A stretch of 64,000 nucleotides of DNA, from positions 16,730,722-16,794,721 of the forward strand of contig OZ037766.1 in assembly GCA_964035545.1 (NCBI GenBank). The letters run 5' to 3'. Origin of the DNA: Bugula neritina. Taxonomy: Eukaryota; Animalia; Bryozoa. Of this stretch, positions 2,853-42,877 are shown in pieces; the stretch's first letter is position 1, and each line of letters opens with the position of its first letter. The position numbers were made by a program, and so were the translations under genes. The notes under the pieces are model-generated. The model was not told where the DNA came from, ran no database searches, and was given only the letters and a program-made list of their open reading frames with translations.

Positions 2853-5800
2853 CTAAGACATTTCAACATCCTCATTAAAATAACCATCAGATTCCTTTCT
2901 GTAGACATGTTTTGGTCGCTCTAAAAACTTTTTAACTCTTTTTATTGCGTGTTGACTTGTTTCCTCCTCTTTTATTTCAGAATTCTACACATACAAGAGA
3001 ATTGGACATAATCCATTATTTTTAGTATATGAATGACATATTTCATACTATAGAAACATCAACACAAGTTTAGATATATTGATATTTGGAGTAAGGTATT
3101 GTGGTGAATTATGTAAGATATAAGAATTGGTAATTCATTGTGTAATTATGTTTATATATCTTTTTGGTCAAAAAATGATTGTTCCGTCATTACAATAATT
3201 TAGAATAAATTTAACAAGGCAGGTGATTTCTCAGGATTACCCAGTGTAAAAGACAACCAGTTTTAAAATAAACTCGTATTTTTATGGGCTTGTTTACTAA
3301 GCAATACTTGTTCCTCAATTTGATTATCAAACAGTTTCATGAAATAATTAATCTGAAATTACTCTGAAAGTCAACATATAGATTTTTGGGAATGGAAAGA
3401 GTATAACATACCTAAACTAAATGAAGAAAAGCTAATTGTTTTATGAATTATTTGCAAGCGAAAACATATAACGTGTAGTTTATAAAGTTAAATTTACAGA
3501 GTAAAGTATATGCAACTATCAAGTTTTTAACCCACATTATGACATCTAATATACAAAACACTTTACTCTTTAATCTTTTTTACAATGTGAAAGAAACAAT
3601 AAACTTTAAATTGTAAAACTGTTGAGTTTTGTGTGTTTTGTGTGGTGTGTGTGTGCGTGTGCGTGTGCGTGTGGTGTGTGTGTGTGCGTGTGTGTGTGTG
3701 TGTGTGTGAATAGTTGTCAGTCTGAGAAAATGTTTGTCTACAGTATCATGACCTAAATATCTAGTTTTTATTAATAAATGATATTCCTTTCCATATTTTA
3801 AGATATAACACAACGGAAAGAGTACTTGATCTACGATGAAGGGGGAGCTCTTCGAACAATGAGAGCATAGTAATAGCAACATGTTGCAATTCACAACTTT
3901 CGATTGACTATAAATTTATAAATTATATGACTTACATTAACAACATTTTCAGTGAGTATTGTGGAAATTGGAGGAGTGATATTCTCAATGTGGAGCTGTT
4001 CTCGGACAACAACTAGAATCCTATTTGGCTGATAACATTTCATTCCATATGTGTTTCTCCCTGTTGTTTAATAAGTGAGAACTATAGTGGATATATCATA
4101 AATATGATATAGCAGATACCTAGGAAATATAACTATCTCTTTAACTTAATAAATACATACATTGTTTATTAATCAGTAAAATGAAGTTCCGGCATCATGC
4201 TGGCAACATGGTCAAATACTTTTGCTCTAGCTTATAGGAGCAATTATGATCCGATGCTTTCCCTTAATCAACAATAACTCAGCGGAATTCTAGCCTATGA
4301 CCTAGCACATTTGTCATAATAAGTTATTAAATATTGGGCCGCGCTGCTCCCTGTAACTTTAGTTAATATAGATTAAGTAATAAATCGCATTAAAAACTGG
4401 TATATAAATTAAATTCATATTTTATATTAAAAAATTCTTGCTTGCAAAATTTGTGATCAAAATAAAAGATGTCATCTCATATCAACAACACACACAACAC
4501 AGACAACACACACATACCTGCAAGATCAGCTTCCGATCTACATTGCGCACTGGTGATGTATGAGTTACTTAAGAGAATCACCACCTTCCTACTCTTTTCT
4601 AGCACATTGCACATTTCGGTATGTCTTCTAGCACCTGGTACAGAATCTCTGTCGTACAAGTACAAGCAGCACTCATCCTGGAAGTTAAAGTTTCTGGTAT
4701 TTAGTAGATAGATTGCACTTATTTACTTATAAATGACTCATGGCATGCAAAGATATTTTGTCCTTATTAGTTATTTAGCTTTGTGACTAAATCACAAATT
4801 CATGTTACACATACACTTGTAAAATACAAAAAGAAGATTTTTGATATATACACTCATGGTTAAATAAAAAGCACATTTTATGGAGCTAGGCAACATATTA
4901 TGTCCCCTAATTGTTCTCTAAAGCATTCAAATTGTCATAAGTAACTGTATGAATAAGCTCTGTATACAACACTATATAAGCTATATATATAACTATATAC
5001 CTTTTTTTCAACAGCTGGAATTATTCTTTCTTTTAAAAATTTCACATCAACTTGAGACTCGGAATCATAAGAAATAAACGCATCATATGTACACTCATTT
5101 TCAAATCTTATGCTTCTCAGTTGATTAACAAATGTGGTCCAGACAACTTTAGGATGAGAAACAAACCACCTGAACTTGTAACAGGGTACAGCAATTACTG
5201 CTGTTAAGATTATACTACCAATGACACTCAAAGTTGCAATAAGCGGTATTTTTGTATCACATTCAAACACATTCCTTTGAAAACTGTAAACAAACTCATC
5301 TTGACCAGAACACCTAACTTCTTGATAACGAGTAACTAGTGCACGATTGTTCAACAACCAGCTTTTAAAAAAGATGTCACAGTCGCACGAAAATGTATTT
5401 CCATCAATGTTCAATGATGCAACTAGACTCTTTTCCAATTCCTCCAAAAACTCCTGAGTAAAGTTTGTAATTTGGTTGTGGTCCAAGTTGATAAGTTGTA
5501 GATTCAATAGAGGAGCAATGCCAATATCAAAACTGACTAGTCTGTTAAGGCTCATGTCAATTTCCCTGAGGTTCAAATTTTTTAAAAATGTGTCTCTTTG
5601 AACGCTTGATATGTTGTTATATCGAAGTTTTATAGTTTCCAAATTCATCATTTGAATTGTTAAATTGTAAGGAATTGATGGTATTTTATTGTCTGACAAA
5701 TCTAGAATTTTCAAGGCTTTTAGTTTAGATAATTCAATAGCTGTGTGATCCCAATTTGCTCCAAGGTTATTGTTTTTTAAATATAGTTCCATGAGGGATG

Positions 5801-7636
5801 GGCAGATGCCATATAAATTTGTAAGTCTATTATTTTCCATTTTCAACACCGAAAGAGCTGAAATATTGATGCAAAGTTGTGTCATGTTAGTGTTATCTAA
5901 AGCAATAGGATCTATAAATGAATGGAGAAAATTGTCATTTAAGTTTAAATTCTCTAATGATGTTAATTGCGGAATGCTCACTGAAATGCCATGATTCAGC
6001 TGTCTGCTATGGCATAACGTGTGTTGTTGCAAAAGCAAAATATCATTATTTCTGTAAGCTAACAAAGGCATGGTGTGTAAGTAATTCTTGCTCAGATCCA
6101 AGGACTTCAAATGATTAATTGCTATCCACCATCTAATTGGGAGAAAAGTCTGATATTCATCTGATGCTATTCCTGCACTTTTGAGACTTAATTCAATTAT
6201 ACTTAGTGTTGAGGTTTGCAATCTGGTTCGTCTAGTTCCTAGAGGGTTTCCATCAAGTACAACACTTTTCAGGTTCGGACAAAAATCAAAGGCATTGAAA
6301 GGTATAATGGAAATTCTACAGTACCCTAAATTCAACTGTTGCAAAGTTGTGAAATTAGTAAATACTGTAGTTTGCAACTCGGAACCAAAGGCCAAGTCAC
6401 TATACTTAAAGTTAAGTTCAATAAGGTTTGGTAGTTTTTTAAGCATATCCATTGTAGCATTTGAAAAATAACAATCAGAGAAAACTCGAAAAATTGTTCG
6501 CCATCTTTGCATATAAACTACCTGCAAACTTTCAGGAAAATATATAAAAGCATGCTTTGCATCATTTGGGCACTTTTTGTATGGTGCGACACCACTCAAA
6601 TCAAGCACTTGTAAATGGGTAAAATGAGCTAAAACTGTTGCACCAGTTTTCCAGAAGTCGAAAACATCTGACATATTCAAATTAACCAGCTTAGAGTTAA
6701 TAGGAGAGAAATACGATTTTGATAGCTCATTGAAGCCACAACCTTTAGGTCCAGTCATTCCAGCCATATTGAACTCTCGCAAACTAGCAAGGTGTTTAAA
6801 CTCTGGGCTAATTGTATCGCAGTTATGTAGTTTAATGCAATTGTTAGCCAAATTTAAAGAAACTAAATCTGGAATTTTAGAAAATATTTTCACAGGTATA
6901 TCAGTAAACAGGTTTCTTTCCAAATTTAAATGCTCAATGGAGTTATTTTGTACAAACAAATCATCAGGTAGTGTGTCAAGGGATGTGTCTCGGATAGTTA
7001 AACTGTTTAATGCTGAGGCATGCTGAAAGGTATGGGGAGAGATAGAGTGTAAATTGCCTGATATGGTTACTGTTTCGAGTCTGGGCAGAGCTTTCAGGTG
7101 TTCATCAGTAAGAGTCACACCAGGGCCATAGAATTTAATGTCTAGAAGCACCAAAGTCCGAGGAAGCTTTGCAAAGATCCCCGGATCTTCTGTTGTGCAT
7201 ATGGCAGTAGTGAAGTTGCATAATTGGCATTCATCCAAATTGCAGCTTTCGGATTTGCCATGTTTTACTGACAGCAGCCATATTACAAGAAAGCAACTCC
7301 AAATATTCTTCTAGAAATTCAAAAGAAAAATAAATATATGTATAAGCGTGTATAACATGTATAACCTGTCATGCATAGTAATGCTCCGCAAAAATGCATG
7401 GTAAATTGATTTGTCCAAGTTATTGCAATAGAATTAAATTTCATTGGGTTTTCTGTGATCACAAATAAATGAGCAAATTATTTCACAAAAATATTCACTG
7501 AAATTAGGTTTTGCATAAAACAAATATAGTACTTTTGACTGTGTATACTGTAAAGGCTACATCAAGCACAAATTAAAAATCTAAAACATAATACCAAAGT
7601 AAAGATTGAATGTACTTATACTTTTAGTGGTTTCAT
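2853..7636 (-). CDS. TLR: Toll-like receptor, single-cysteine-cluster type (signal peptide, LRR array, LRRCT, TM, TIR)
   Basis: Exons (minus): 7636-7622 (MKPLK, tentative start), 7310-5001 (KNIWSCFLVIWLLSV signal peptide; many LxxLxLxxN repeats; LRRCT GNTFSCDC...C...C; TM LIATLSVIGSIILTAVIAV; TIR box1 YDAFISY), 4677-4518 (LYLYDRDSVPG...SRKVVILLSNSYITSAQCRSE), 4060-3936 (RILVVVREQL...), 2984-2853 (AIKRVKKFL...EMS*). Splice phases 0,0,1,0 join into one open frame. Confidence 0.9.
3626..3708. repeat. (GT)n/(GTGC)n microsatellite in the last TLR intron
   Basis: Direct reading of a gtgtgt/gcgtgt run. Confidence 0.95.
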
Positions 7637-10048: not shown

Positions 10049-13000
10049 TCAACCACTGATATCCCAGTGTTTCCATGGAGTGTTTGAAAACATCTCTTTG
10101 TAAAGTTGAGGAATTATCTCCACTTGCTGGGCTGCTGAAGCAGCGTAACTTGGATATTTCTCAATTACAATCTTGGCAGCTGCAGCATGCTCTTTGGCAG
10201 CCTGCTGACAGTAACCAAGGGCGGTAGTCAGCTCTCTCATACGCTTCGTAGGGTTAGCATGACTCCCTAAAAACAAACACCAACAATGAAAAAATTATAA
10301 AATATGACTTTATAAAGTAAGTCAAATTTTTTAGTAGCTAAGAGAAAATATAGTTTCACAGTTATTGCATAGGTTTACAGGACATACAGTAATATGTTTT
10401 TTTTTAGGCAAATGCTAAAATAATGCCTGTCATATACACAGGTTGATGGAGCAAAACTATTAAAGGCAAGCCAAAGGTATGCAGCTGAAATATTTTAGTA
10501 TGACACATGCGTATAGGCTATTCATGCCTTATAGTTAAAGTTGATCCACAACTCTTTTTGATTTTTATATTACATAGACAAATATGTAAGATGAAATGGT
10601 ATGATAGAAAGGTGCATGTACTAGTAGCTACCTGCAGTGTTGAGCATTAGCAGCTCCATATATTCATTATAAAGTCTAGTCACTGCTTGTTGGTCTTTAA
10701 TGTCAGCCAAATTATCTGCAAGTACATAGGTCAACTTTGCACACAACAGCTTCACCAATACTCCACCTTAACAGCCCTGATTAGTAAAACCCATTAGAAT
10801 ATATATTATACTATATTTCAGTAGGTTACAGTAAATAATATACCAAAAATGAAACTATTTTTCCAATAGAATATTATAATATGTAGCATCAAACCAATTT
10901 GAAGTTAACTTTTACACACAAGGATGGAGTATAGAATAACAATGCTGCATATTTGATAAAATTTGTACCAAGTTACTTGAGTTATAAGACTAATCAGCAA
11001 TTAGGGAACCCATTTAGCAGCCTGACGTTACCTTAATTTCAGATAAGAGTAAATTTAACCACATGGTCAACTAATCTAATTAAAAATAAGGAGTATTCCA
11101 CTTAACATGACAAATTATTTATAATAAATATTCAAATATAAACATGAAAGTCCTCTAAATAGCAACCTTCATTGATAGTGTTGAGAACAGCAAGTAGTCC
11201 TAGCTCCTCGTCGCTGCATGCCACTTCCTTTAACTTCTTTCCAAAGAAATCGAAATGATGCACCAAGATCTAGCTCAAAATAAAAAAGCATTGAAAGAAT
11301 AAGACATTACCTAACATATAGCAAAACATTCAAATGTTGAATACTCTTATGAAATTTTCTAGTTGTTTTCAAAGGTGAAAAATGAAGTAATGTATAATTT
11401 TGCTAATCTATAAATATTCTATTTTTGTGTTTAAGAAAACTGTATCATTTCAAAGAAACTTTCATTTGAAGCCAAATAATAAGTAATAAATAACTAAAGA
11501 ACTAAATGTGTTACTTGAATTAGTTATAGTACTCTCAAGTTATTGTATTAGTTCTAGTACTACCAAGTTATTGTATTAGTTCTAGCACTACCAAGTTATT
11601 GTATTAGTTCTAGCACTATTATGTTATTGCATTAATTCCAACTAGTAGTTAGTTCCATTCTTATAGATGTAGCATTGATTTTAGAGAATCAAAGGAAATA
11701 GAGTCTCACTAACCTCATATTCTGGATACAGACTGACAAGTCTGCTAGGTGCTGCCTCCCACGACCTCCAACCAAAAAGATAATGCTTCCCGGTCTCCAG
11801 GTCATAACGCTGTGACGCTGCTAACAACAGTAACCTGTATATCGAGCACTTAGTCAGCAAAATCCTATCTTCCAAATGAAGTTGCATAAATCCTGAAAAA
11901 TGTCAATCAACTTGTTAAAAATAAATCATGTGACCTGGCCAATGATGCCTGATATAGTAATCAATGTTTTCACATAATTGTTCATTTTACATGGCACCTT
12001 CATACCAAAAATCCCTAGTGATCACGCTGAATGTGCCAAACCATTATTCTGCAATGAACTACCACTACAGTGCTATCCATCGTATTTTTACTGGCAGCAT
12101 TGTACAAAGATGACAAAACCAAAACTAAACTTAAATCTAGTTATTTCTTTGAGGCCAAAATGCAAAAATATTTATTATATTTCAATGTATTACTTGGTGC
12201 ATAAAAGGCAACATCTAATATTTAAATTAAAAAATAATATATTTAGCTTAATATGTTAATAAAAGATAATAATTAACCACAGCTTTGTTGTGCTGAAAAT
12301 TGTTTCAATTTTGACACACTAAAAATTGGTAGTAAGACATAATAAATAGCCCATCACTGAGCAGGACCAGACCAAAGGTGATCAGGCATAATAAATAGAA
12401 ATTAAAATGTTAGTAAAGTTAACTTTACTAAGAATCAAAATATAGATAAGAAATATAGCAACTATGGTAAAGAATATAATTCAAATTGTACCAATAACTA
12501 TTCTAGATTTATTTTTGTACAAATATGTAAATGAATTAAAGTTTGCATGAAAAAGGAATGGCTAGAAATTTTGTATGTACAAATAACCAAGCTTGAATAT
12601 TTTTATGAAAAAACATTATGCACAACTATTATGTGAAAGATGGAAATTATAAAAAAACCATTTGATTTTAAAAGCTTTCAATAGTCAATTATAAATGCAC
12701 CCTCTTTTCAGATATTGGGCTAATAATTCTTAATTCCAAATACCTTTACAACAGCTAAAAATAAGTGTTGAAACATCACTTGAAATTTTAAAAAATGCTC
12801 CAAAGTAATTTTGCTATAGCTAATATCATTTAAAATTTGAAACATGTTAAACCTAAAGTAACATCTCATGATATAGAATGGCTTTTTCCTGACTCGGGGC
12901 TAAATCAAAACATTTCTTTCTATATTGGAAAGTAAAAGATGTAAGGCTTAGAAAAAGTAACCAACAACATGAATGTATAATAGATAAATTCATTAGAGAA

Positions 13001-16000
13001 CCAGAGCAGCTTAGCTATATCAAGTGTACACTGTATTTATCGGCAAAAACTCACCATCTAATTTTTTAGAAAAGCTAACAACTAGCATCAAAGAACCCTG
13101 GAAACAGTCATAAACTAATTGAGCAAATGTTGGATCAGGTATTCCAGGCACTACCATCTTTTCATCCTAAAAGCAAGAGAGTATATTTAGTCAAATCAAC
13201 TGTGTGAAAATTTCAGATTTTAGAAAACAGAGAATGTGTATTTTATATAGAGCATAAGACAGAAGTTGGATTGGCATTTCCAAACAAGCATGTTCGTCCC
13301 CTCTTCTTCATGATGACATAAAAATAAGCATTTTATTTAAAAAATGGCTATTAACTTGCTTATATTTCACATATATATTTCATTCTGTCAGGAAATTAAA
13401 CGTGATAGGAGTGAAAGCAGAAAGTCTTTTGACTGAAGTAAAGTTAAAAACTATTCAAAGATCTCCTCACCAAACTCTCTAGTCTATACATCTGGTACTT
13501 ACAACATGGTAACTTCTAACAATGGTAACTTAGCAGACTCACAGTGATAATTTGATAGTAGTCTTTACGAAACGTGCTGAACAGAGAGGATATCTGCTGT
13601 ATCCTCAAACTCGCACTCCTTGGTAGAGGACACGAACTGAGAGCTGATGGTTTTGGGCAATTTATTGAGAGGTCCATCGGATGCTCCGCCTTGTCACTAT
13701 GGACTGAATCGGAAGAGTTACAAGCAGCAGGTAGAGGTGACTGAAAGGGGTGAGTTATGTTTGAAGAATGCCGAGTGCTACCATAGAGAAGATCCGTGTC
13801 AACTACATCCAGCGGTGCAGACGTCGGTGACAAAGTACATGTGTACCCGGATGGTCGGGTCATCGAGTACACAGCAGTACTCGAGGTTGAGTAGTCTGTA
13901 GTTGAGGAAGTCATGCACACTGGAGAGAGTGAGTTGAGATGAGTGACAGGGGATGATGATGAATAACTCAAAGAGGGCCTGCGTAAATACTCGGCAGAAG
14001 GCGCTTCTAGTTGACTTGCAGAAGAAGGCATAACAACTTCTAACGTTTTGCTATTGACTCCATTCTGAAATATTACACTTCGTATATTAGATACATTAAC
14101 ACAAAACTGGAATTATAGAACTATGTTGCGCTTGCTTCATACCATATGATTGTATAATGGTTAATGCTACAAAAATCAATTTAATACTTAAAATACTACT
14201 GATTAAAATGCAAAAGTAAGTGCTAATTTACTAATAGTTCATGATAATGTGCAAAACTTACTAGATTGGAAGAGTCAATTTCAGCTTGAGACATATTTTC
14301 TGCTGATATGTTTTTCATAATTCTTGCATAACGAACATTATTAGGAAGCCGACCAATTCTCGATGCTGGGAAATAAAATTAAACATTAAAAGTTCAAGTT
14401 TAGGTAACCTTACGTACTCACTAACTTGCACAGAACAGTGATTCAACAGTCCTTAACTTTTAAGCAAAAAACATACGAAATAAAAATGACAAATAATCAG
14501 TCGGTAACTTTATGTATGAATATAACCGTAACAAAATTTCCAAATCAACAGAAGTGATCAATTATGGATTTAAAAAAATTAAATGAAAACTTGAAACTTA
14601 ACCTAGTTGAATTAAACTTAATTAATTGCCGGTTGTCCATAAATAAATACAAGTTTGCACTGCAGCCAGTTCAGTTGGAGAAGTATGCTTAGTATAAAGT
14701 TCATCGGTTACTTCATTTCAATTTTGCACAGTTGTCTCCTCTTAGATGAGCATACATTTAGAACTTGTCTTTTTTTAATCATGTTCTTCATTCATTGTAA
14801 AGAAAAGTAGAGCGCAATCACTTTGTTCAATCTTATGGCCACAATCAATTCATGAAAGGGTTCTGAGGAATAATCTGCACTGGAGGTAGGCATGATATCA
14901 ACCCTTATAGTGAAAACTATAACTCTGATTAAGAGTACTGTAATAACATGATGCTATATTTACAGAGAGACTGTAAACTGTCAATGGAGAAGAGTAACAA
15001 AACCCAGTAACTATTTATCTATATATTATTACTGTATTGTTGTTAGGACTGTGATAGAAAACATCGGAATTCTCACTCTGTATCTTGCAGATTGAGCAGC
15101 ACTTATTTAGCCGTCACAAACTGACAGCCAATTGGCCAAACACAGTACCTTGTTTTGACATGCCAACTTTGAGACATTTTTGCAGACGACAAGCTCTGCA
15201 TTGAGATCTAGACATCATGTTGATAGGACAATTACCACCAGCCTGACAAATTAAACGCTCTGGCTTACAGTTTCCATTTTGAGTTCGTCGTCTGAAGAAA
15301 CCCTGTTAAATATATGTAGACATGACAAGTAAATGCCAACAAGGGTATACTACAGCTAAACTGACGGGGTCTCTGCATGACTTACAGAAACATTCACTCT
15401 AATACATTACTTTTCACTATGGCCATACGGTTGGATGCCCTTGTTTAACTTACATACCAACAGAATAGTCAACTAGGGTAAATTGAAGTGACCAACAGTT
15501 ATCTATTACCTCATTCAATAGACAAATTCTAGTATCAAGCACGTTAAAAACTAAAAACAAAGATTGTGAAAATTTTCAACATGTGATTTTGATAGGAAAT
15601 GTTGTAAATTCACCACTTAGCAAGCAAGTTCCTTAAGCTTGAGTAGTATTTCATTTGAATCTCGAGTAGCAGAGATGGTGTGTTACCACCTAAAGAAACC
15701 TCACCTTACAGCCTTCACAAGTAAGCACTCCAAAGTTGAAGCCTGAGGATGGAGATCCACAAACCCTGCAAGTCAGCTGCTTGATATTATGTGTGTCCAG
15801 TAGTCCTTTGCCTACAACAAACAGTGCACATGCTGCAACCTGCCAACTACTCACGCACACACTTTAAATTCATGTCTTGGAAATTTTTATCAGGGGCAGT
15901 TTTAAAAATAAAGTGTTAAAGAAGTTTAAATTTGTCCGTAGGCAAACTTTTGAGCATTGATACTTATCTAACCATTGAATCAACTAAACATAACACAAAG

Positions 16001-18957
16001 TCAGAATGGCTAAAAAAGTAAATGACAAACATAAGAGAACTAGAGTATAATTGGGTGATGTGATGAAGGTGCTAAGCCAACAGTTACATAATGTAAACAA
16101 TGATTATAATCATCTCTTATAGGTTTTAAATGACTGGAGTGCAGTTTAATTCATAACAAATTTAATTATCTTTTTAGATCCCATCCCACCATTAATTTCA
16201 GATAATTACTAATGAGTTGTGTATACATGATAGCTGGACTAAAGGACTGATTTATTTGGAGTTGTCCTTAATTATAAAAGCAAATTTCATAAGAATAGAG
16301 TATAGGCCCATAGGCACATGTGGTATTTTGTTTGATGCAATCCGAAAGAGCGTCTATTCCAACAATGTTAATGCTAAATGTGTGACTATCAGGTTTTTCT
16401 CTAAGCTGATGAGAGCTAATTGAAAACTATTGAAAACTATAGAAAACATACGATGAAGTCAATTTGCATGGGTACGCAACTCTAAAGTTGTACTAGAGTT
16501 GCAGTTAGGATATTCCTGCAGATTGGACTGTCACATTGAAAGAGACTAGATGGCACTACTTAAAGAAATATATACACTAGTTCAACAGATGACCCAATTA
16601 GGTTCAGCTACCATCTTAATTTGTATAACAGGAGAAAATTAAATCTATCAACTGTTCAATCCTGAGGAAGTTTAGAATAAGCTGAACTACAACATATTTG
16701 GTGATCTATCTACTAACCAGGAGATTCCATGCCGATGGCCAGACACTTCTGGAACCTGCAGTATGGACAGGAAGTTCTAGTGGCCTTCACTATGAGACAT
16801 GAATTCTTATTGGTTCGATTTGTACAGATGTAGGCACCATTAGAGCGCTTACAGCTTCTAGAGTAGAACTTCTTACAGGCTTCACAGACAAAGGCTCCCC
16901 AGTAAAAACCAATAGACGTGTCTCCACATATTTGACACGACTCCTTGAAGGATTCTAAAGAGGAGCATAACATTACTGTGATAATAAACAGTGTCTTGAG
17001 TTGAGCTGCAGTCAAAGCTATGGCGCCTAGTTGCCTCACAAACTTGGCAATGTACCAAGATCCTTCATCAAAACTGTATTACATAATAGGAAATTAAATC
17101 AAGATAACATAATGGCTCTCTGTGACAATGCTGGGTTCTTTTTACCATACAATAATGTTTTAGATACTCTCTCATACAGCATCCGGTGGATGATATTGTA
17201 GGCATATACAGGATTGACTGTCCCTTGGAGTAATATGCTGCTTAACTGATACAGCCTACAAGCTGTGCAACAGGAAGTTTTGGGATATTACAGAACTGCC
17301 AACATCTTTCATAACTTCATAATATTACTATCAATTGAACATTGATTAGGTTGAGTCCTTAAATTAAGCATCATTGTAAACTCTGGCTAGCGAGTTCAAA
17401 ATTCAATATTAAAAAAATACAACTAGATTATGAGAAGATGCAATCTAGTGTTAATTTAAGTCAACATTCAGAATTAGAATGTGTAGGGATATGAATTTAC
17501 ACCCTTAATTAGACTCTCTAGCAGCTAGGTGTTTACAGTGGATTTATACTCTAAACAAACCAACGGACGGAGAAAACAACTGCAGCAGCAAAACCAAATC
17601 ATAAGGAGGAGTACGCAGAAGGATGAAATAAATTCTGAAATACTTAAAAAAAACTGATTTATGATGGTAGTGAGTTGAGAGGTTATATGGCGCCCTTGCA
17701 TAATGTAACCTACCACCTAATAATTTTGTAGAAGACGAGTTTATTTCTCTCAGAACAACTAAGCTGCTTTATGGATGTAAGGTGCGGGCATTTCATGTTG
17801 TAGAAGTTACTAACAAATCTTGGAAAGAATATGAGGCAGTGGAATATAATGCATCAAGTTAAATGTGGGATAAATGCCAGACTTTTGATAGAAATTTATA
17901 TGGATGAAAGCTGCAAATGAAAGAGTCTGACTAATAAGCATGATGTGAACATAATTTAAAATGGCTATTTCCCGCTTCAACCAAAATTTTAATGGCGATA
18001 CCACGCATATTCATATTGATGGTCAACCATGTCTCTCACTTCCTTTTCTACAGTAGAATATAACTACACCAACTATGTTGTTTACCTAATTTGTTATTCT
18101 GCGGTATTGTGGGACTTGGCTGGTTTACACCTGGTGATGTCATCGGAAGAGTTGATTGAAAACTGCAGTTGGCATCAACTTCTGAGTCTAAAATGCATTC
18201 AGTATGTTATAGTTGTACTAATACTTATGAAGGTCATGAACAAACTAAAGTATAGCATTCTACATACACGTGCCAATTCATATACCTCCTCTAGTTTGAA
18301 ATAAAGCTAGAAGTAGTGAAAAGTATAATCTTTCGTAGGCTTTTGGCAAGACTTGGCCAAAGTATGACTGTCAGTTTTATTGCAATGTAACTGGCTTGAG
18401 AATGGTGCTAAATCTACGTTTTTCAGATGTTTTGCAGTCAAATATGCTAAATTAACATATTCTATAAACAGCTTTTGAGAGTAGCTGAAGGAAATACATT
18501 CAACTTTATGAAACTTGCAGAAACGCTTGAGCAACTGTACAGAGGCTATAATAAGCCAACTATTGGAGAAAGAAAGCAGGCAGACATGGCCAGCATAATT
18601 AGTATATATATAGAGATGTAAGCCAAAGATGTTAACTCCTGCAGGTATCACATGTAGTTGTTTACCTGCGGCACATTCCTGACCTAGTTTACTGGGTTCA
18701 ATGGGAGAATGATTTTCTCTCCAGCTGCTGGAGTTGTTCTGCACATTGGAGGGTGGCTGCATGGAGTCATCACTGTTCTCATCAAATGAGAGGGGAAACG
18801 GAGCTAAAGGAGTTAAGTCTGCAGCCTCTGTTTTTATAACCTGTGATTCAGTAGAAGGAGGGACCAACCGCTGATTATTGGTTGGAAAATATTCACTTGT
18901 CATCTCCCCTGCATATCTGTTCATAAATATAGTTTGCAATTTCTTAGGTAAATCCAT
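10049..18957 (-). CDS. 2DBD-NR: Nuclear receptor with two tandem DNA-binding domains (2DBD-NR; A/B-DBD1-DBD2-hinge-LBD), about 703 aa
   Basis: Eleven coding exons with GT-AG boundaries and consistent phases: 18957-18666, 16954-16718 (DBD1), 15811-15705 and 15302-15149 (DBD2), 14365-14262 (ASRIGRLPN C-terminal extension), 14064-13543 (S/T/P-rich hinge), 13166-13055 (H3 VVSFSKKLDG), 11892-11714 (FMQLHLEDRILLTK), 11269-11167 (SDEELGLLAVL), 10715-10632, 10266-10049 (AF-2 IPQLYKEMF, stop TGA). Total 2112 nt, open throughout. The start ATG (18957) is tentative; in-frame ATGs also occur at 18921 and 18903. Confidence 0.93.
11536..11645. repeat. 28-bp tandem repeat (3 copies plus a degenerate one) in a 2DBD-NR intron
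   Basis: caagttattgtattagttctag(t/c)actac starting at 11536, 11564 and 11592. Confidence 0.9.
15149..15811 (-). CDS. 2DBD-NR second C4 zinc-finger DBD (P-box CEGCKG), two exons 15811-15705 and 15302-15149
   Basis: CRVCGSPSSGFNFGVLTCEGCK | GFFRRRTQNGNCKPERLICQAGGNCPINMMSRSQCRACRLQKCLKVGMSKQ. The phase-0 intron falls at the K|G position commonly seen in NR genes. Not in the ORF track because the exons are short. Confidence 0.95.
16718..16954 (-). CDS. 2DBD-NR exon encoding the complete first C4 zinc-finger DBD (P-box CEACKK)
   Basis: CQICGDTSIGFYWGAFVCEACKKFYSRSCKRSNGAYICTNRTNKNSCLIVKATRTSCPYCRFQKCLAIGMESP; 237 nt, phase 1 at both ends. Confidence 0.95.
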
Positions 18958-32217: not shown

Positions 32218-35200
32218 ATGGCTAAGTTTGACCCCCCCTAAAGAGTTTGACTTTGATCTGTCTGGCTGGGCAGAATGGTTTACTCGCTGGCGTCATTATA
32301 GAACACTGTCAAAGCTCAACCAGGAAGAAGAACAGTTACAAGTTGATAGCTTTCTCTATTGTATGGGAAATAAAAGCGAGAGTATTTTCAATGGTTTGGC
32401 TTTGTCAGATGAAGAAAATAAGAACTACCAAAAAGTATCCGAGGCTTTTCAGAAGTATTTTTCTCCACATAAGTACGTGTTTTATGACAAAGCCTGTTTC
32501 TTTAAGCGCTGCCAACAACAAAGAGAAACTGTTGAACAGTATGTTAGGTCTCTAAATGACATAGCAAATAGGTGGGATTTCTCCAATAGATCGGAGCAAA
32601 TGCGAGACAGAATTGTAGTAGGAATCACGGACACTAACTGCAGTCGTGAAATGCAGAAAATTAATGTTGAAAACCTAACGGAAGAAGTTGCCATAAATAT
32701 GGCTAGACAATTTGAGCATGTAGACAAGAACATTAAAGACTTGACAGAAAGTCATACTCAGGGTAGTACTAGTAGTACTTCGGTATATGCCGTCTCCGAA
32801 TTTAGTAGTAGTGGTGGTCACACAAATAACAAGTCTCAGAAGCATAGCTCTAGGAGTAACAGTACTAGGCAAACTAATAACTCTACTCCCTGTGGTCGAT
32901 GTGGTTATGTGAAACACATAAGAGGTACATGCTCCGTTATATTGTAAGTGTAAGCGCTGTGGTAAACTCGGACACTATGCAAAAATGTGTAAATCTAAGC
33001 CTGCCAGTCATGTTCAGCAAGTCAAAAAAGAAGTGGAAAGCTTATTTCTGGGTGAGATAGCGGAGAGTAATGTAGGAGTGTAGACCAAGACTATTGTTGA
33101 AGACAAGCTTGACTTTCCAGTTCAGTTCAAACTTGATACTGGTGCAGATGTCTCCATACTTCCTCAAAGGCTATGTTCTAATGTGCCATTAATCAAAACT
33201 AAGAAATAGTTGTTAGGCCCAGGTAACACTAAGATACCAGTTGTAGGCTGTTTTAATGCTAAACTTTCTGTAGACAATGTTACTCAAACTGAAACTATCT
33301 ATGTTGTAAATCAAACAAAAGCCTTGCTAAGTCGAAATGCCTGTGTTAAGCTAGGGTTAATTTCATGTAAGTGTGATGTAGACTCTGCTTCTAATGTTAC
33401 TGACAACTCTGTATTTTGTAGAGAATTCCCAAAACTTTTTAGTGGTCTAGGTAAAATGAACCATACTGTACGTATAGAGTTGTGTTCTGAGTGTACACCA
33501 TTTGCTATTAACACCCCTCGTTTGGTCCCCTACCTCTTGTTGTCTAGTGTTAAGCAGGAGTTGAGTGATATGGTCGCAAAAAGAGTAATTTCTCCAGTCA
33601 GTGAGCCCACAGATTGGTGTGCTCCCATGGTTGTAGTCCTGAAGGCTAATCGAAAGGTGAGAATCTGTGTTGATTACACTGAGTTGAACAAAGTTGTTCG
33701 TAGAGAAGTACACCCCATGGGTCATGTTGAGTCAAGTCTCGCCAAGCTTGGTGATGGTAACTTTTTTACAGTACTCGATGCTAACTCAGGTTTCTATCAG
33801 ATTCCTTTCTCCCTTAAAGCTATAATGTTGACTACATTCTTGCCTCCGTTTGGTAGGTTTGCTTTTAATCGTTTACCTTTTGGGTTGTCGTCTAGTCCAG
33901 AATTGTATTGCAAAACTGTTTCACGGGTTCTGGAAGGTCTGGGTGGTGTTGTCTGTTACATGAACGATGTTTGCATTTGGGGTAAATCTCAAAAAGAACA
34001 TGATAGTCGTGTTCGTGTTGTTTTGCGTAGGATGGTTGACGCTAGTATGACTCTGAATGTTGAGAAATGCAAGTTCTCTCGTAGCAGCATCAAGTTTCTT
34101 GGTTATGTCATATCCTCTTCTAGCATTCGTGCTAATCCTGAAGCAATCCAGGGTATAGAAGGTTTTGCCATTCCAACTTGTGTTAAAGATGTTCGTAGTT
34201 TTCTTGGAATGGCTAATCAGCTTAGCAGGTTCTCCATAAGGTTAGGTGAACTCAGTGCTACCTTGCGTGAGCTTCTTCATAAAAACACTCCTTGGATTTG
34301 TGATGTTGCTCAAGAACAAGCCTTCTGTGACATCAAAAAAGAGTTACAACTTTGTGTTGAAATCGCTCCCTATAGTCTGCAGCGTGAAACAGTTATTCAC
34401 ACTGATGCTTCTCATTGTGGTATAGGTGCTGTTTTGTCCCAATTTCAAGACAATGGCGAGTTACACTTAGTCTGTGCTGCTTCTCATGCAGAGAAGAGGT
34501 ATGCTACTATAGACGCGTTAGCAGTTGGTGGGCTTGTAAAAAATTTTAGGGATTATATTGTTGGCTTTGGAGTGGTTATCAAAACTGATTACAAACTTTT
34601 AGTGCCCCTTTTGAATGATATTGAGCTTGACAAGAATCCTGCACGTATTCAGAGATTTAGAATTCGCCTCATGAGGTTCCAATATAAGGTGGAACACATT
34701 TCTGGAAAGAAAAATGTTATTGTGGATGCCTTTTCTTGTTCTGTAGGTCCCATTAGTAAGGCTGATGTTAAGTTCATGGAAGAAGAAGAGCTTTTCGCTG
34801 TGTCAGCATTGCATAATACTGCCGCTTCTCCTGGCTTGAAAGTTCAACAAGAGAATGATGAAATCATATCTCGTGTTTTTCAATATGTGAGGTCTGGTTG
34901 GCCCACATTTGCCTTTTCATAAAATTTTGTTGCGCCCCTATTTTGAATGTAGGCCTAGGCTTTCTACAATTGATGATATCTTGGTTCTTGACAGTCGCAT
35001 TGTTATTCCCCATGCCGAACGCCTAGCTGTGCTTGACAAAATTCATAGTGGTCACCTTGGCATAACCAAATGTAGATCTTGAGCTGCACAGTCAGTCTGG
35101 TGGCCCAATATGTCCCAGCAAATTGCAGAGATGGTTCAGAAATGTGAGTCCTGTAGGAAGGAGTCAAACGTTCAGCAATCCACACTCCTTCGTTTTGAGT

Positions 35201-40244: not shown

Positions 40245-42877
40245 GTGAGGAGGCCGCCTTCGCCAGAGTGGCAAGCCCCAAGGAGAGTGAGTAGGCCGCA
40301 AGGCCCACCAAAACCTCCGGCTTGGGCACTCAAAAACCGCTTTGAAGGTTTGCTTGATGAGGGAGTGAACGACGAGTGGGAGCAAAACAGGGATTTTCCT
40401 CGGTTGCCCACACGAGCATCAGTCCGAGAATTCACTCGGCCGCCCGTGTGTGAGCGAGACCGAGACGTACCCTGCCCGCCCATGCAACGTCGACGACCCC
40501 CTCGCAACCGAAAAGCACAGGTGCATCCCCAACTCCATGCACATGAGGTGTCGCCTCAAGAGACGAACCGCTCAGTGAGCGCTCAGCCATATGGAAGCAG
40601 CTATTTCCTCCCCGGCAAACTTGCTGGCAAAGCTGTCACATTCCTGTTGGATACTGGGTGCACCACAAATCTACTGAGTCGGCGTCTATTGGACACTCTC
40701 AGTGCCAGGGACAGGGCTAGCCTAGAACCATATGAAGGGGAACACGGCACGTTGGCGGACGGGTCGTGTATTCCTTTCTATGGGGTAATCCAGTTGACTG
40801 GTAGAGTCCGTGATCAGACGACCAGTGAGACCTTCATCGTCAGTCAACTCAAGGAGGATGCCATCTTGGGCATGCCATTTCTGAAACGACACAGGTGCTA
40901 CATAGACTTTAGCAAGTCGGCAGTAGTGATGGCCGGGCGTGAGCTGGCCTGTGTCGACCGATTTGGCCGACCCTTGGTGGGGGGAGTGCAGGTGGTACAG
41001 CGCTGTACTGTACCTGGGCGCTCCCGGGCTACAGTTCGCTGCAGAGTGAACTGTAGGGAAATCTCCGAGCTCGGAGTGGTGGAAGGTGCACTGGGGGGTG
41101 TCCAGCTCGCTAACAGTCTGAATAGGCTGGATGAGCGGGGGAGTTCCTGGTCCAGTGCGTAAATCCTTTTACGGAGCCGGTAGAATTACCGGCTGGGTCT
41201 CTAGTGGGGAAGTTCCACTCCGTACAGGAGGAGGATGTAGGGCCCACGCTGGAAACAGCGGACGACGCCCGGGGAGTACCCACTAGAGACGGCAGGGGGC
41301 TGGTGCCTGAACACGTAGCAGAGTTGTACGAGGATGCCTGCGATGGCTGTGAGAGCAAGCGAGAACGCCTGGTGATGGCGCGGCTACTCTCTGAGTACAA
41401 GGACGTGTTTAGTTGCGGCGACCATGACATGGGTCTGACTAAGACTGTCTGTCATGAGATACCCCTGGCGGCGGGGACGGCGCCCATTCGGCAGCCGACC
41501 CGCCGGTTAGGTCCTGAGAAGGAGAGAGAAGTGAGCCGTCAGGTGCAAGACCTTCTGAACCGGGACCTGATTGAGCCAGGCCATGGGGCCTGGAGTTCTC
41601 CAGTCGTCCTGGTTCGGAAAAAGGATGGTAGCTGGAGGTTTTGCGTTGACTATCGCAGGCTGAACAGCGTGACCATCCAGGACGCTTACCCTCTCCCTAG
41701 GATCGATGAGTCGCTCGATGCCTTAGCTGGTAGCAAGTTCCTCAGCACGTTAGACTTGCTAAGCGGGTATTGGCAGGTGCCCCTGAGTCCTGAAGCACAG
41801 GACAAGGCCGCGTTTATAACGCGGGATGGGCTCTAGAAATGGAAGGTGTTGCCATTCGGACTTACGTCCGCACCGGCCACCTTCCAGCGACTCATGGAGC
41901 AGGTCCTGAGTGGGCTGCACTGGAAGACCTTGCTCATCTATCTCGATGATGTCATCGTCATCTCCCCCGACTTCGACACACATGTCAGTCGACTCAGGGA
42001 GGTGTTCGACAGACTTCGAGCTGCGGGCCTGAAGCTCAAGCCCTCGAAGTGTGCATTACTGCAACGCGAGGTTAAGTACCTGGGCCATGTAGTTGGTCGA
42101 GACGGGGTCGCCACCGACCCCGAGAAGGTACGGGCTGTGAGGGACTGGGCCGTCCCTGTCGACCTCCCTGAATTGCGGTCATTCCTGGGGCTGGTAGGGT
42201 ACTATCGTCAGTACATACCAGACTTCGCCGGAATTGCACAGCCGTTAAATCGGCTGACAGCAAAGGGGGTGCGATGGCAGTGGACGCAGGCCGAGCAGAA
42301 GGCATTTGACCACCTGAAGGATCGCCTGGTGGAAGCACCCATCTTGGCGTATCCTGACCCTGCGAAGGAGTACATTTTGGATACTGATGCCAGTAACCAT
42401 AATGTGGGGGCTGTGCTATCGCAGGTCCAAGATGGTCGCGAGGTGGTGGTGGCTTACTATAGCAAGGCCCTGTCGGCGCCTGAGAAGAACTACTGTACAA
42501 CCAGGAGGGAACTCTTGGCAGTAGTCAAGGCGGTCAAACACTTTAGACCATGTCTATATGGGCGTACATTCCGGCTTCGGACGGATCATGCGTCTTTGAT
42601 ATGGCTGTGTCGACGGGCAGAACCATCAAGCCAAGTAGCGCGCTGGCTAGAGATCCTGGCAGAGTTTTCTTATCGGATCGAGCATCGACCCGGTAAGAAA
42701 CACGGTAATGCAGATGGACTCAGCCGCCGCCAGGCAGATGGGTGTAAGCAGTGCCAGAATATCGAGCGCAGGGACGGTGGACCCCCTCGCTCGGACGTTG
42801 AAGCGCAGTTGGGGAAAGCGGGTGTGTACAGCTGGGAAGAAGGGCAACTCCTGCCCGAATCTCCAAGAGACAACTGA
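40245..42877 (+). pseudogene. pol (PR-RT-RNase H) of gypsy element 2, disrupted and lacking integrase
   Basis: ORFs 40245-41162, 41204-41836 and 41846-42877. Frameshift in a G-run near 41140, in-frame TAG at 41834, and the frame ends shortly after NADGLSR. Confidence 0.9.

What the first reader, a model, noticed from the sequence alone, without database searches (positions are those of the whole stretch)
10049..18957. Complete nuclear receptor with two tandem DBDs (2DBD-NR, CEACKK + CEGCKG)
Seen: a second full C4 DBD in two short exons (15811-15705, 15302-15149) follows DBD1 after a 17-aa linker (ESPGKGLLDTHNIKQLT), then hinge and LBD, all in one open spliced frame. Established: nearly all nuclear receptors have one DBD. 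2DBD-NRs were first described in flatworms (Schistosoma) and later in other spiralians, and a CEACKK first P-box with a CEGCKG second P-box and a short linker is their signature. Their response elements and ligands are largely unknown. Inference: this is an intact member, possibly from a lineage where the family is uncharacterised.
Basis: partly seen in the sequence, partly recalled or inferred. Interest (0 to 1): 0.85.

Follow-up and report, generated by a model that had tools for sequence, protein, structure and literature searches.

The report
Bryozoan two-DBD nuclear receptor gene
This is an intact, expressed gene for a nuclear receptor with two DNA-binding domains in a row; the family is known, it had not been described in moss animals (bryozoans), and what it binds is unknown in every species.

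Summary
On the minus strand, 18957-10049, twelve GT..AG exons give one open 737-codon frame. The order is A/B region, DBD1 (P-box CEACKK), a 17-residue linker, DBD2 (CEGCKG+FFRR), a hinge with G-box RIGRLP, and an LBD ending in the AF2 core LYKEMF.

Pfam zf-C4 hits DBD1 whole (6e-21). It hits DBD2 as two complementary halves in two exons.

Intron-less contigs from four public studies join exons 1 to 9 at exactly these borders, including the key DBD1-to-DBD2 joint. The gene is single-copy.

The joined model is 97.4% identical to GenBank KAF6040142.1, a 'hypothetical protein' of Bugula neritina. That protein scores two zf-C4 and Hormone_recep (32.7 bits, cut-off 23.5). Its LBD folds like RAR, ROR and LXR LBDs.

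A careful tree places the gene with a Watersipora orthologue on the 2DBD-NRA side. The same genome also has a 2DBD-NRB gene on another chromosome; another note of this scan (s1-467074) had already flagged that one.

The 2023 family survey lists no Bryozoa.

Verdict: a new member of a known family. It has two small lineage oddities, an enlarged D-box in DBD1 and a G-box Q-to-L change. Interest is modest.

The parts
18666..18957 (-). Coding exon 1 (A/B region, start ATG at 18957-18955), 292 nt, ends in phase 1
   Evidence: Frame check. Joint 18666|18187 is seen in contigs of X1, X3, X5 and X7. Six of the 7 listed differences from the transcripts are synonymous.
18086..18187 (-). Coding exon 2 (A/B region), 102 nt
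   Evidence: Joints 18666|18187 and 18086|16954.
16718..16954 (-). Coding exon 3: the whole first DBD. P-box CEACKK; finger II is C-X8-C-X9-C-X2-C. 237 nt, phase 1 in and out.
   Evidence: zf-C4 6.1e-21, profile 2-69. D-box length. All 5 listed nucleotide differences from the transcripts are synonymous.
15705..15811 (-). Coding exon 4: inter-DBD linker plus zinc finger I of DBD2, up to P-box CEGCK
   Evidence: zf-C4 1.8e-7, profile 2-24. Joint 16718|15811 in X3, X5 and X7, and as a loose end in X1.
15149..15302 (-). Coding exon 5: GFFRR plus zinc finger II of DBD2
   Evidence: zf-C4 4.4e-12, profile 25-70. Joints 15705|15302 and 15149|14365.
14262..14365 (-). Coding exon 6: C-terminal extension of DBD2 with G-box RIGRLP
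   Evidence: Joints.
13543..14064 (-). Coding exon 7: Ser/Thr/Pro-rich hinge (174 aa), the fastest-evolving part
   Evidence: No Pfam hit. Only one copy in the genome. Eight of 14 listed differences from the transcripts are non-synonymous.
13055..13166 (-). Coding exon 8: start of the LBD (about helix 3 and the first half of the Ti signature, FSKKLD)
   Evidence: Joint 13543|13166. The loose end at 13054 reads as the start of exon 9. Alignment A2.
11714..11892 (-). Coding exon 9: LBD, second half of the Ti signature (GFMQLHLEDRILLTK) through the beta turn
   Evidence: Colinear with P0178.
11167..11269 (-). Coding exon 10: LBD
10632..10715 (-). Coding exon 11: LBD
10049..10266 (-). Coding exon 12: LBD helices 10-12 with AF2 core LYKEMF; stop TGA at 10051-10049
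   Evidence: LBD fold.

Best explanation
The locus is the single-copy, transcribed bryozoan orthologue of the 2DBD-NRA group (proposed NR7A) of nuclear receptors. The host is Bugula neritina or a very close sibling. One polypeptide of 737 aa carries two complete C4 zinc-finger DBDs 17 residues apart, a hinge, and a canonical 12-helix-type LBD with an AF2 helix. Shown here: the gene structure, its splicing, the domain content, the family placement, and purifying selection on DBD1. Inferred from the family and from general nuclear-receptor knowledge: it acts as a DNA-bound transcription factor. DBD2 (EGCKG+FFRR, with an RxGRxP minor-groove 'grip' five residues downstream) should read an AGGTCA-type half-site with a 5' extension, as NR1 monomer binders such as Rev-erb and ROR do. 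DBD1 (EACKK, closest to the ERR P-box EACKA) should read a second, adjacent site, so one molecule covers a composite element. By analogy with the flatworm proteins, LBD-mediated homodimers, not RXR heterodimers, would bring four DBDs to the DNA. The AF2 core LYKEMF should recruit co-activators. The ligand and the response element are unknown.
For: Twelve GT..AG exons give one open 737-codon frame. zf-C4 is found once whole and once as two complementary halves. Intron-less contigs from four studies join exons 1-9 at these exact borders; one 3024-nt contig spans exons 1-8. The hinge exon and the DBD1 exon each have only one copy in the genome, so the contigs are not from a retrocopy. All 5 listed DBD1-exon differences between the window and the transcripts are synonymous, against 8 of 14 non-synonymous in the hinge. 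The public protein KAF6040142.1 is 97.4% identical end to end and scores zf-C4 twice (142.9 bits) and Hormone_recep (32.7 bits, cut-off 23.5). Its LBD model has pLDDT 85.6 and pTM 0.83 and matches RAR, Nur77, ROR, LXR, TR and VDR LBDs at TM 0.7-0.75. All 16 zinc-ligand cysteine positions are kept: 15 are invariant columns and one (Cys5 of DBD1) is kept in at least 90% of 45 family members, the bryozoan included. In the careful tree the model is sister to Watersipora XP_067937169.1 (100/99). A 100/99 branch separates the 19 group-B rows from the side holding all CEACKK rows and the model. The family features (P-P module, 17-22 aa spacer, G-box, Ti, AF2) come from PMC10497141. Homodimerisation without RXR binding was shown for Sm2DBD-alpha in PMC1810520.
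Against: No DNA binding, ligand binding or dimerisation was tested here. The homodimer prediction gave no answer. The flatworm DBDs bound none of the AGGTCA direct, everted or palindromic repeats with 1-6 nt spacing that were tried, so the half-site inference from the P-boxes may be wrong. DBD1 departs from the family norm: 8 residues in the D-box instead of 5. The G-box is RIGRLP where 78 of 87 group-A sequences have RxGRQ(P/S). The runs are only guessed to be RNA by their records. Junctions 9-10, 10-11 and 11-12 rest on colinearity with the public protein and on contig length, not on laid reads.
Confidence: 0.9

Rival explanations
1. There are two neighbouring genes: a DBD-only gene (exons 1-3) and an ordinary one-DBD nuclear receptor (exons 4-12), wrongly fused by the reader.
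For: About 0.9 kb of intron separates the two DBDs. DBD-only nuclear receptors exist in animals (Fig 1 legend of PMC10497141).
Against: Contigs in X3, X5 and X7 carry the joint 16718|15811 in frame, and single contigs run from exon 1 to exon 8. An independent GenBank model of 735 aa has the same fusion, and so does the Watersipora orthologue.
Confidence: 0.02
2. It is an assembly artefact or a recent local duplication of a DBD exon, or a decaying pseudogene.
For: Tandem domain repeats can arise from misassembly. The window assembly differs by 2-5% from the transcripts.
Against: The two DBDs have different P-boxes and different exon structures. The same architecture appears in an independent assembly, in RNA-like contigs of four studies, and in a second bryozoan genus. 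The frame is open, and the listed substitutions in the DBD1 exon are all synonymous.
Confidence: 0.01
3. It is an NR1-type receptor (PPAR, ROR or Rev-erb-like, as NCBI's automatic names for relatives say) that gained an extra DBD on its own in bryozoans. On this reading it is not a member of the old 2DBD-NR family.
For: Automatic names of relatives include 'PPAR delta-like', 'ROR-beta-like' and 'NR1D2-like'. DBD2 and the LBD do resemble NR1. The best structural matches are NR1 and NR4 LBDs.
Against: DBD1 alone retrieves mainly two-DBD proteins as best hits. The P-P module and spacer length are those of group A. In the tree of both DBDs the bryozoan pair sits inside the CEACKK-CEGCKG side. The LBD aligns colinearly with the LBDs of dozens of 2DBD-NRs, E down to 1e-20.
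Confidence: 0.04
4. The two DBDs are alternative cassettes. Exon 3 (237 nt) and exons 4+5 (261 nt) are both phase 1 to 1, so skipping either keeps the frame. The main products would then be one-DBD isoforms with switchable specificity.
For: The phases and lengths are as stated. A predicted Ptychodera flava isoform (XP_070577175.1) starts from another first exon and lacks zinc finger I of DBD1.
Against: No skipping joint (18086|15811 or 16718|14365) is present in the contigs of four runs; all carry both DBDs. The two Watersipora isoforms differ by 6 aa and both keep two DBDs. However, contigs drop rare variants, so a minor isoform is not excluded.
Confidence: 0.08

Closest known systems
2DBD-NRA group (proposed NR7A) of Wu & LoVerde 2023. 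Examples: Schistosoma mansoni Sm2DBD-NR alpha/beta/gamma, Crassostrea gigas Cg2DBD-gamma, Lingula anatina La2DBD-NRA1/2.
   Same: [quoted passage not shown] The P-P module is CEACKK-CEGCKG followed by FFRR. The spacer is 17 aa. The pre-grip stretch is 5 aa, followed by an RxGRxP-type G-box. The Ti signature and an AF2 core of hydrophobic-hydrophobic-x-E-hydrophobic-hydrophobic type are present. The tree places it on the A side.
   Different: The phylum, Bryozoa, is not in the survey. The DBD1 D-box has 8 residues (10 in Watersipora) instead of 5. The G-box is RIGRLP where nearly all group-A members have Q. The fifth residue after the G-box is Y, not the 'ancestral' H. There is an insertion of about 10 residues before helix 12. 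The stem branch is long.
XP_067937169.1 / XP_067937168.1 'peroxisome proliferator-activated receptor delta-like' of Watersipora subatra (Bryozoa, Cheilostomata)
   Same: It is sister in the tree (100/99). It has the same P-boxes and a near-identical linker (GKGLLDTH core). Its DBD1 D-box is also enlarged, its AF2 is LYREMF, and its Pfam content is the same.
   Different: It is only 36-44% identical outside the conserved cores. Its G-box is the canonical RIGRQP. Its automatic name hides the two-DBD nature.
2DBD-NRB group (Cg2DBD-delta type, P-P module CLPCKS-CEGCKK)
   Same: It has the same overall two-DBD architecture. The same bryozoan genome carries one, on G000:C3 about 4568973-4583234.
   Different: Its P-boxes differ, its G-box type is KxGR, and it forms a separate starred clade (100/95). 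The window gene is not of this group.
NR1 monomer-binding orphan receptors (Rev-erb NR1D, ROR NR1F)
   Same: The DBD2 P-box EGCKG+FFRR, the RxGRxP grip box in the C-terminal extension and a ROR-like AF2 (P-x-LYKE-hydrophobic-F) are shared. The LBD fold matches ROR, RAR and LXR at TM 0.7-0.75.
   Different: Those receptors have one DBD and a 12-residue T-box region. Here a second, EACKK-type DBD sits upstream, and LBD sequence identity to any solved LBD is only 14-21%.

Membership tests
2DBD-NR (proposed NR7) | Two complete C4 zinc-finger DBDs in tandem, followed by one LBD, in a single polypeptide | tested here: met
   zf-C4 on exon 3 (whole) and on exons 4+5 (complementary halves). There is one open spliced frame. 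Single contigs span both DBDs. P0178, 97.4% identical, scores zf-C4 twice plus Hormone_recep.
2DBD-NR group A | P-P module EACKK (DBD1) - EGCKG (DBD2), the latter followed by FFRR | tested here: met
   CEACKK at model residues 155-160 and CEGCKG+FFRR at 242-251. Definition in PMC10497141.
2DBD-NR groups A/B | 17-22 residues between the two DBDs | tested here: met
   There are 17 residues (ESPGKGLLDTHNIKQLT) between the GM of DBD1 and the first Cys of DBD2. The Cys-to-Cys distance is 27, inside the family range of 26-32 found here.
2DBD-NR (typical, 'most members') | Finger spacing C-X2-C-X13-C-X2-C and C-X5-C-X9-C-X2-C in both DBDs | tested here: not met
   DBD2 fits. DBD1 finger II is C-X8-C-X9-C-X2-C (D-box TNRTNKNS); Watersipora has X10. 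78 of 87 group-A sequences have X5. All 16 ligand cysteine positions are kept (15 invariant columns, one kept in at least 90% of rows). The survey itself allows exceptions, so this is a variant, not an exclusion.
2DBD-NR group A | G-box RXGRQ(P/S) five residues after the DBD2 core, with H at the fifth position after it in most members | tested here: inconclusive
   The position is right (pre-grip SKQAS, 5 aa). The box is RIGRLP, which fits the general RXGRZP grip consensus but not the group-A Q; only the model and P0178, out of 87, have L. The fifth residue after it is Y, as in 11 of 82.
Nuclear receptor superfamily | LBD with the Ti signature, an AF2 core and the Hormone_recep fold | tested here: met
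   Hormone_recep scores 32.7 bits (cut-off 23.5) on P0178 residues 522-662. The single exons of the window score nothing alone. The Ti-like stretch FSKKLDGFMQLHLEDRILLT departs from the consensus at two of the specified positions (R for Q/K, T for L/I/F); AF2 is LYKEMF. The AlphaFold model has pLDDT 85.6 and at least 500 PDB matches, of which all 50 listed are nuclear-receptor LBDs.
2DBD-NR group A | Phylogenetic placement with group A on both DBDs | tested here: met
   IQ-TREE careful run, 61 rows by 152 columns. A 100/99 branch sets the 19 group-B rows apart from the side holding all 41 CEACKK rows and the model. The labels need the minimum possible number of changes. No single-DBD outgroup was included.
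2DBD-NR | LBD homodimerises and does not bind RXR (shown for Sm2DBD-alpha and Eg2DBD-alpha1) | not testable with these tools
   Complex prediction on two copies of the LBD gave 'no answer'. Experimental basis in PMC1810520 and PMC10497141.

The most novel reading that the evidence does not exclude
Bryozoan 2DBD-NRA receptors may have re-tooled their DNA-reading geometry. The D-box of DBD1, the loop that sets DBD-DBD contacts and half-site spacing in other receptors, is enlarged from 5 to 8-10 residues in both bryozoan genera. Bugula has also changed the minor-groove grip box (Q to L). The two DBDs are each frame-neutral exon cassettes. Together this could mean a response-element architecture, or a splice-switchable one- versus two-DBD output, found in no characterised nuclear receptor.
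Probability: 0.12. Interest if true: 0.5.

Novelty: new member of a known kind. Interest (0 to 1): 0.3.

Why it matters
2DBD-NRs are the least understood nuclear-receptor subfamily. No ligand, no response element and almost no biology are known for them, and the one published EMSA attempt failed. This locus adds Bryozoa to the phyla that have the family. Together with the group-B gene on another chromosome, it shows that bryozoans keep both ancient paralogues, as brachiopods do; the 2023 survey found only group B in phoronids. It also corrects public annotation ('hypothetical protein', 'PPAR delta-like'). It offers a compact, transcript-verified tandem-DBD sequence with a natural D-box variant for DNA-binding experiments. 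It does not change the picture of the family.

Tried and rejected
1. I ran Pfam on each LBD exon alone. There were no hits; the pieces of 27-71 aa are too short. This says nothing against an LBD, and the question was settled through P0178.

2. I ran complex prediction on two copies of the LBD. The verdict was 'no answer' with score 0.00. It is not evidence either way.

3. I searched for the species' own protein with the DBD1 exon in the 50%-representative library. It was not among the best 150. It was then found with an alignment of three homologues plus the exons given by reference.

4. Rfam on the whole window found nothing.

5. I suspected that G000:C9 5725645-5726174 was a third two-DBD gene, because of overlapping profile ranges. 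It is an ordinary one-DBD receptor.

6. I looked for DBD-skipping joints in the laid contigs. None were found.

7. A retrocopy as the source of the intron-less contigs is rejected, because the hinge exon has a single genomic copy.

I re-ran it from locus references.

9. The joined 737-aa model was never sent to any search, Pfam or folding tool. It was built only inside local scripts from window.fa, for the frame check, for BLAST against proteins already fetched, and for the trees. The public near-identical protein stood in for it elsewhere.
Full report
WHAT IS IN THE SEQUENCE

Reading the minus strand from 18957 to 10049 and joining the exons in a local script gives twelve coding exons:
- 18957-18666
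- 18187-18086
- 16954-16718
- 15811-15705
- 15302-15149
- 14365-14262
- 14064-13543
- 13166-13055
- 11892-11714
- 11269-11167
- 10715-10632
- 10266-10049

Every intron is GT..AG. The joined frame is open for 737 codons and ends at the TGA at 10051-10049. Only the number of junctions is off: there are 11, not 10.

The protein has these parts in order:
- an A/B region of about 137 aa;
- DBD1, with P-box CEACKK;
- the 17-residue spacer ESPGKGLLDTHNIKQLT;
- DBD2, with P-box CEGCKG followed by FFRR;
- a C-terminal extension with the grip box RIGRLP;
- a Ser/Thr/Pro-rich hinge of about 175 aa;
- an LBD of about 230 aa that ends with IPQLYKEMF.

DOMAINS, EXON BY EXON

Pfam zf-C4 matches exon 3 over profile positions 2-69 (6.1e-21). 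It matches exon 4 over 2-24 (1.8e-7) and exon 5 over 25-70 (4.4e-12). DBD1 is therefore one exon. DBD2 is split right after the P-box lysine into two exactly complementary halves.

The five LBD exons are 27-71 aa each and score nothing alone.

The joined model itself was not sent to any search or folding tool. It exists only in local scripts.

TRANSCRIPTS

Thirteen public runs of 'organism A' or its 'symbiont metagenome', from four studies, hold about a tenth of the words of the gene. That is about what exons alone would give.

I laid four of them, one per study, on window:12958-18957. The result is intron-less contigs whose joints fall exactly on my exon borders: 18666|18187, 18086|16954, 16718|15811, 15705|15302, 15149|14365 and 13543|13166.
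- The 14262|14064 border is bridged with 27 divergent letters. These translate to the allele of the public protein.
- The loose end at 13054 reads as the first bases of exon 9.
- One contig of 3024 nt (X7) runs from 378 nt upstream of the ATG through exon 8 and about 1 kb beyond.
- X1 supports the DBD1-to-DBD2 joint through a 28-letter loose end that is exon 4 with three changes.

The runs are only guessed to be RNA. However, the hinge exon and the DBD1 exon each occur once in the 216-Mb assembly, so the intron-less form is not a genomic retrocopy.

No joint that skips a DBD is present. Contigs cannot exclude minor isoforms.

SELECTION

The contigs differ from the window by 2-5%. All five listed differences in the DBD1 exon are synonymous, as are six of seven in exon 1. 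In the hinge, eight of fourteen change the residue. The gene is therefore under purifying selection where it should be.

THE SAME PROTEIN IN PUBLIC DATA

The DBD1 exon, searched alone against 1.8 billion representatives, returns mainly proteins with two matched stretches as its best hits. Ten of these scanned as two zf-C4, and seven of the ten also as Hormone_recep. They come from a hemichordate, an oyster, amphioxus and a monogenean.

A profile made of three such proteins plus the window's exons by reference found two bryozoan proteins:
- KAF6040142.1, 'hypothetical protein EB796_001535 [Bugula neritina]', 735 aa;
- XP_067937169.1, 'PPAR delta-like isoform X2 [Watersipora subatra]', 702 aa.

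The Bugula protein is 97.4% identical to my model from first to last residue, with 17 substitutions and two one-residue gaps. Only one of these differences lies in the LBD. Its differences are those seen in the RNA-like contigs. The window therefore comes from B. neritina or a very close sibling type. The independent gene model confirms all twelve exons.

On that protein Pfam gives zf-C4 twice (142.9 bits) and Hormone_recep at 32.7 bits against a cut-off of 23.5.

The model's residues 528-728 also align colinearly with the LBDs of dozens of two-DBD receptors, with E down to 1e-20.

STRUCTURE

The LBD of the Bugula protein was folded with 24 family LBDs. The model has pLDDT 85.6 and pTM 0.83, and is an all-helical sandwich with a small beta turn. 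It has at least 500 PDB matches, of which all 50 listed are nuclear-receptor LBDs. RAR-beta, Nur77, ROR-alpha, LXR, TR and VDR lead at TM 0.70-0.75, with only 14-21% sequence identity.

The tandem DBD unit folds with pLDDT 88.3 and pTM 0.68. The spacer is the least confident part.

All sixteen zinc-ligand cysteine positions are kept in the bryozoan. Fifteen are invariant columns across 45 family members; the sixteenth (Cys5 of DBD1) is kept in at least 90% of them.

WHICH FAMILY

Wu & LoVerde 2023 (PMC10497141) define group 2DBD-NRA by these features:
- the P-P module EACKK-EGCKG;
- 17-22 residues between the DBDs;
- a G-box RXGRQ(P/S) five residues after DBD2;
- a conserved Ti signature;
- an AF2 core.

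The window gene has the module, a 17-residue spacer, the five-residue pre-grip and an AF2 core (LYKEMF). Its Ti stretch is recognisable, but R replaces Q/K and T replaces L/I/F at two of the specified positions.

In a careful IQ-TREE run on both DBDs (61 rows, 152 columns), it is sister to the Watersipora protein (100/99). It lies on the CEACKK side of a 100/99 branch that sets off all 19 group-B rows. The quick tree had already agreed.

It departs from the norm in these ways:
- The D-box of DBD1 has 8 residues, and 10 in Watersipora. 78 of 87 group-A sequences have 5.
- The G-box is RIGRLP. Only Bugula has L there; Watersipora keeps Q.
- The fifth residue after the G-box is Y, not H.
- Both bryozoan LBDs have about ten extra residues before helix 12.
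- The bryozoan stem branch is long.

THE REST OF THE GENOME

A six-frame zf-C4 scan of the assembly gives 64 matches, by my grouping of adjacent half-matches roughly 35-40 DBDs.

One other locus has the two-DBD pattern: G000:C3, about 4568973-4583234, minus strand. It carries CLPCK and CEGCKK and falls in the group-B clade (100/95). Another note of this scan had flagged it independently.

Bryozoans therefore keep both ancient paralogues.

HOW IT PROBABLY WORKS

Shown here: a single expressed polypeptide with two intact DBDs and an intact LBD.

Inferred:
- DBD2 with its grip box reads an AGGTCA-type half-site plus a 5' flank, as NR1 monomer binders do.
- DBD1 (EACKK, nearest to the ERR box EACKA) reads an adjacent site.
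- The short, conserved spacer fixes their distance.
- LBD homodimers bring four DBDs together, as shown for the schistosome and Echinococcus proteins, which do not bind RXR.

Caveats:
- The only published EMSA, on AGGTCA repeats spaced 1-6 nt, found no binding.
- My homodimer prediction gave no answer.
- The ligand is unknown.

NOVELTY

The survey lists Mollusca, Brachiopoda, Phoronida, Nemertea, Annelida, Rotifera, Platyhelminthes, Echinodermata, Cephalochordata and Nematoda, but no Bryozoa. No paper in the library pairs Bugula with 2DBD.

The proteins are nevertheless already in GenBank under uninformative or wrong names. Their presence in a lophophorate is what the family's distribution would predict.

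This is a new member of a known kind. The D-box enlargement is the one feature worth an experiment.

Noticed in passing
G000:C3 about 4568973-4583234, minus strand (L003:7235-7149, L003:3653-3510, L003:2997-2890, L001:3117-2974): This is a second two-DBD nuclear receptor in the same genome. It has P-boxes CLPCK(S) and CEGCKK, the 2DBD-NRB type, and both of its DBDs are split after the P-box lysine. It falls in the group-B clade (100/95). Its LBD and its transcripts were not examined.
   Followed up: partly
window 16718-16954 versus 15149-15811: DBD1 is a single exon, while DBD2 keeps the usual intron after the P-box. Both DBD units are frame-neutral (237 nt and 261 nt, phase 1 to 1), and both end three residues plus one base after the GM of the DBD core. 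This fits an origin by duplication of a DBD unit and later loss of the intron in DBD1.
   Followed up: partly
window 12958-18957 against runs X1, X3, X5, X7: All RNA-like contigs differ from the window by 2-5% and carry the allele of GenBank KAF6040142.1. They include a 3-nt deletion at 13952 and a further one-codon loss within the 27 divergent letters at the start of exon 7. The window assembly is therefore a diverged haplotype or a sibling type of Bugula neritina.
   Followed up: partly
window 40245-42877 (+) and 32228-34922 (+): Two GC-rich islands (up to 58% GC in a 33% GC background) hold retrotransposon remnants. One has aspartyl protease, reverse transcriptase and RNase H in three broken frames.
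   Followed up: partly
window 4938-7238 (-): A single open frame of 767 aa full of leucine-rich repeats (LRR_8, 8.5e-32) lies 2.8 kb downstream of the receptor gene on the same strand.
   Followed up: no
P0152 (XP_070577175.1, Ptychodera flava isoform X3) versus P0151: This predicted hemichordate isoform starts from another first exon and lacks zinc finger I of DBD1, while keeping DBD2 and the LBD. It hints that some lineages may switch DBD1 off through alternative 5' exons.
   Followed up: partly
P0178:700-720 and P0202 (alignment A2, columns about 247-257): Both bryozoan LBDs have an insertion of about 10 residues (YAASAAQQVE in Bugula) between helix 11 and the AF2 helix. None of the other 22 family LBDs in the alignment has it. 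In the model this stretch has low confidence (block mean pLDDT 59).
   Followed up: no
G000, whole assembly: There are 64 zf-C4 matches, by my grouping of adjacent half-matches roughly 35-40 nuclear-receptor DBDs. One of them, at G000:C4:24618411-24618617, is an intron-less DBD inside a 436-aa open frame.
   Followed up: no
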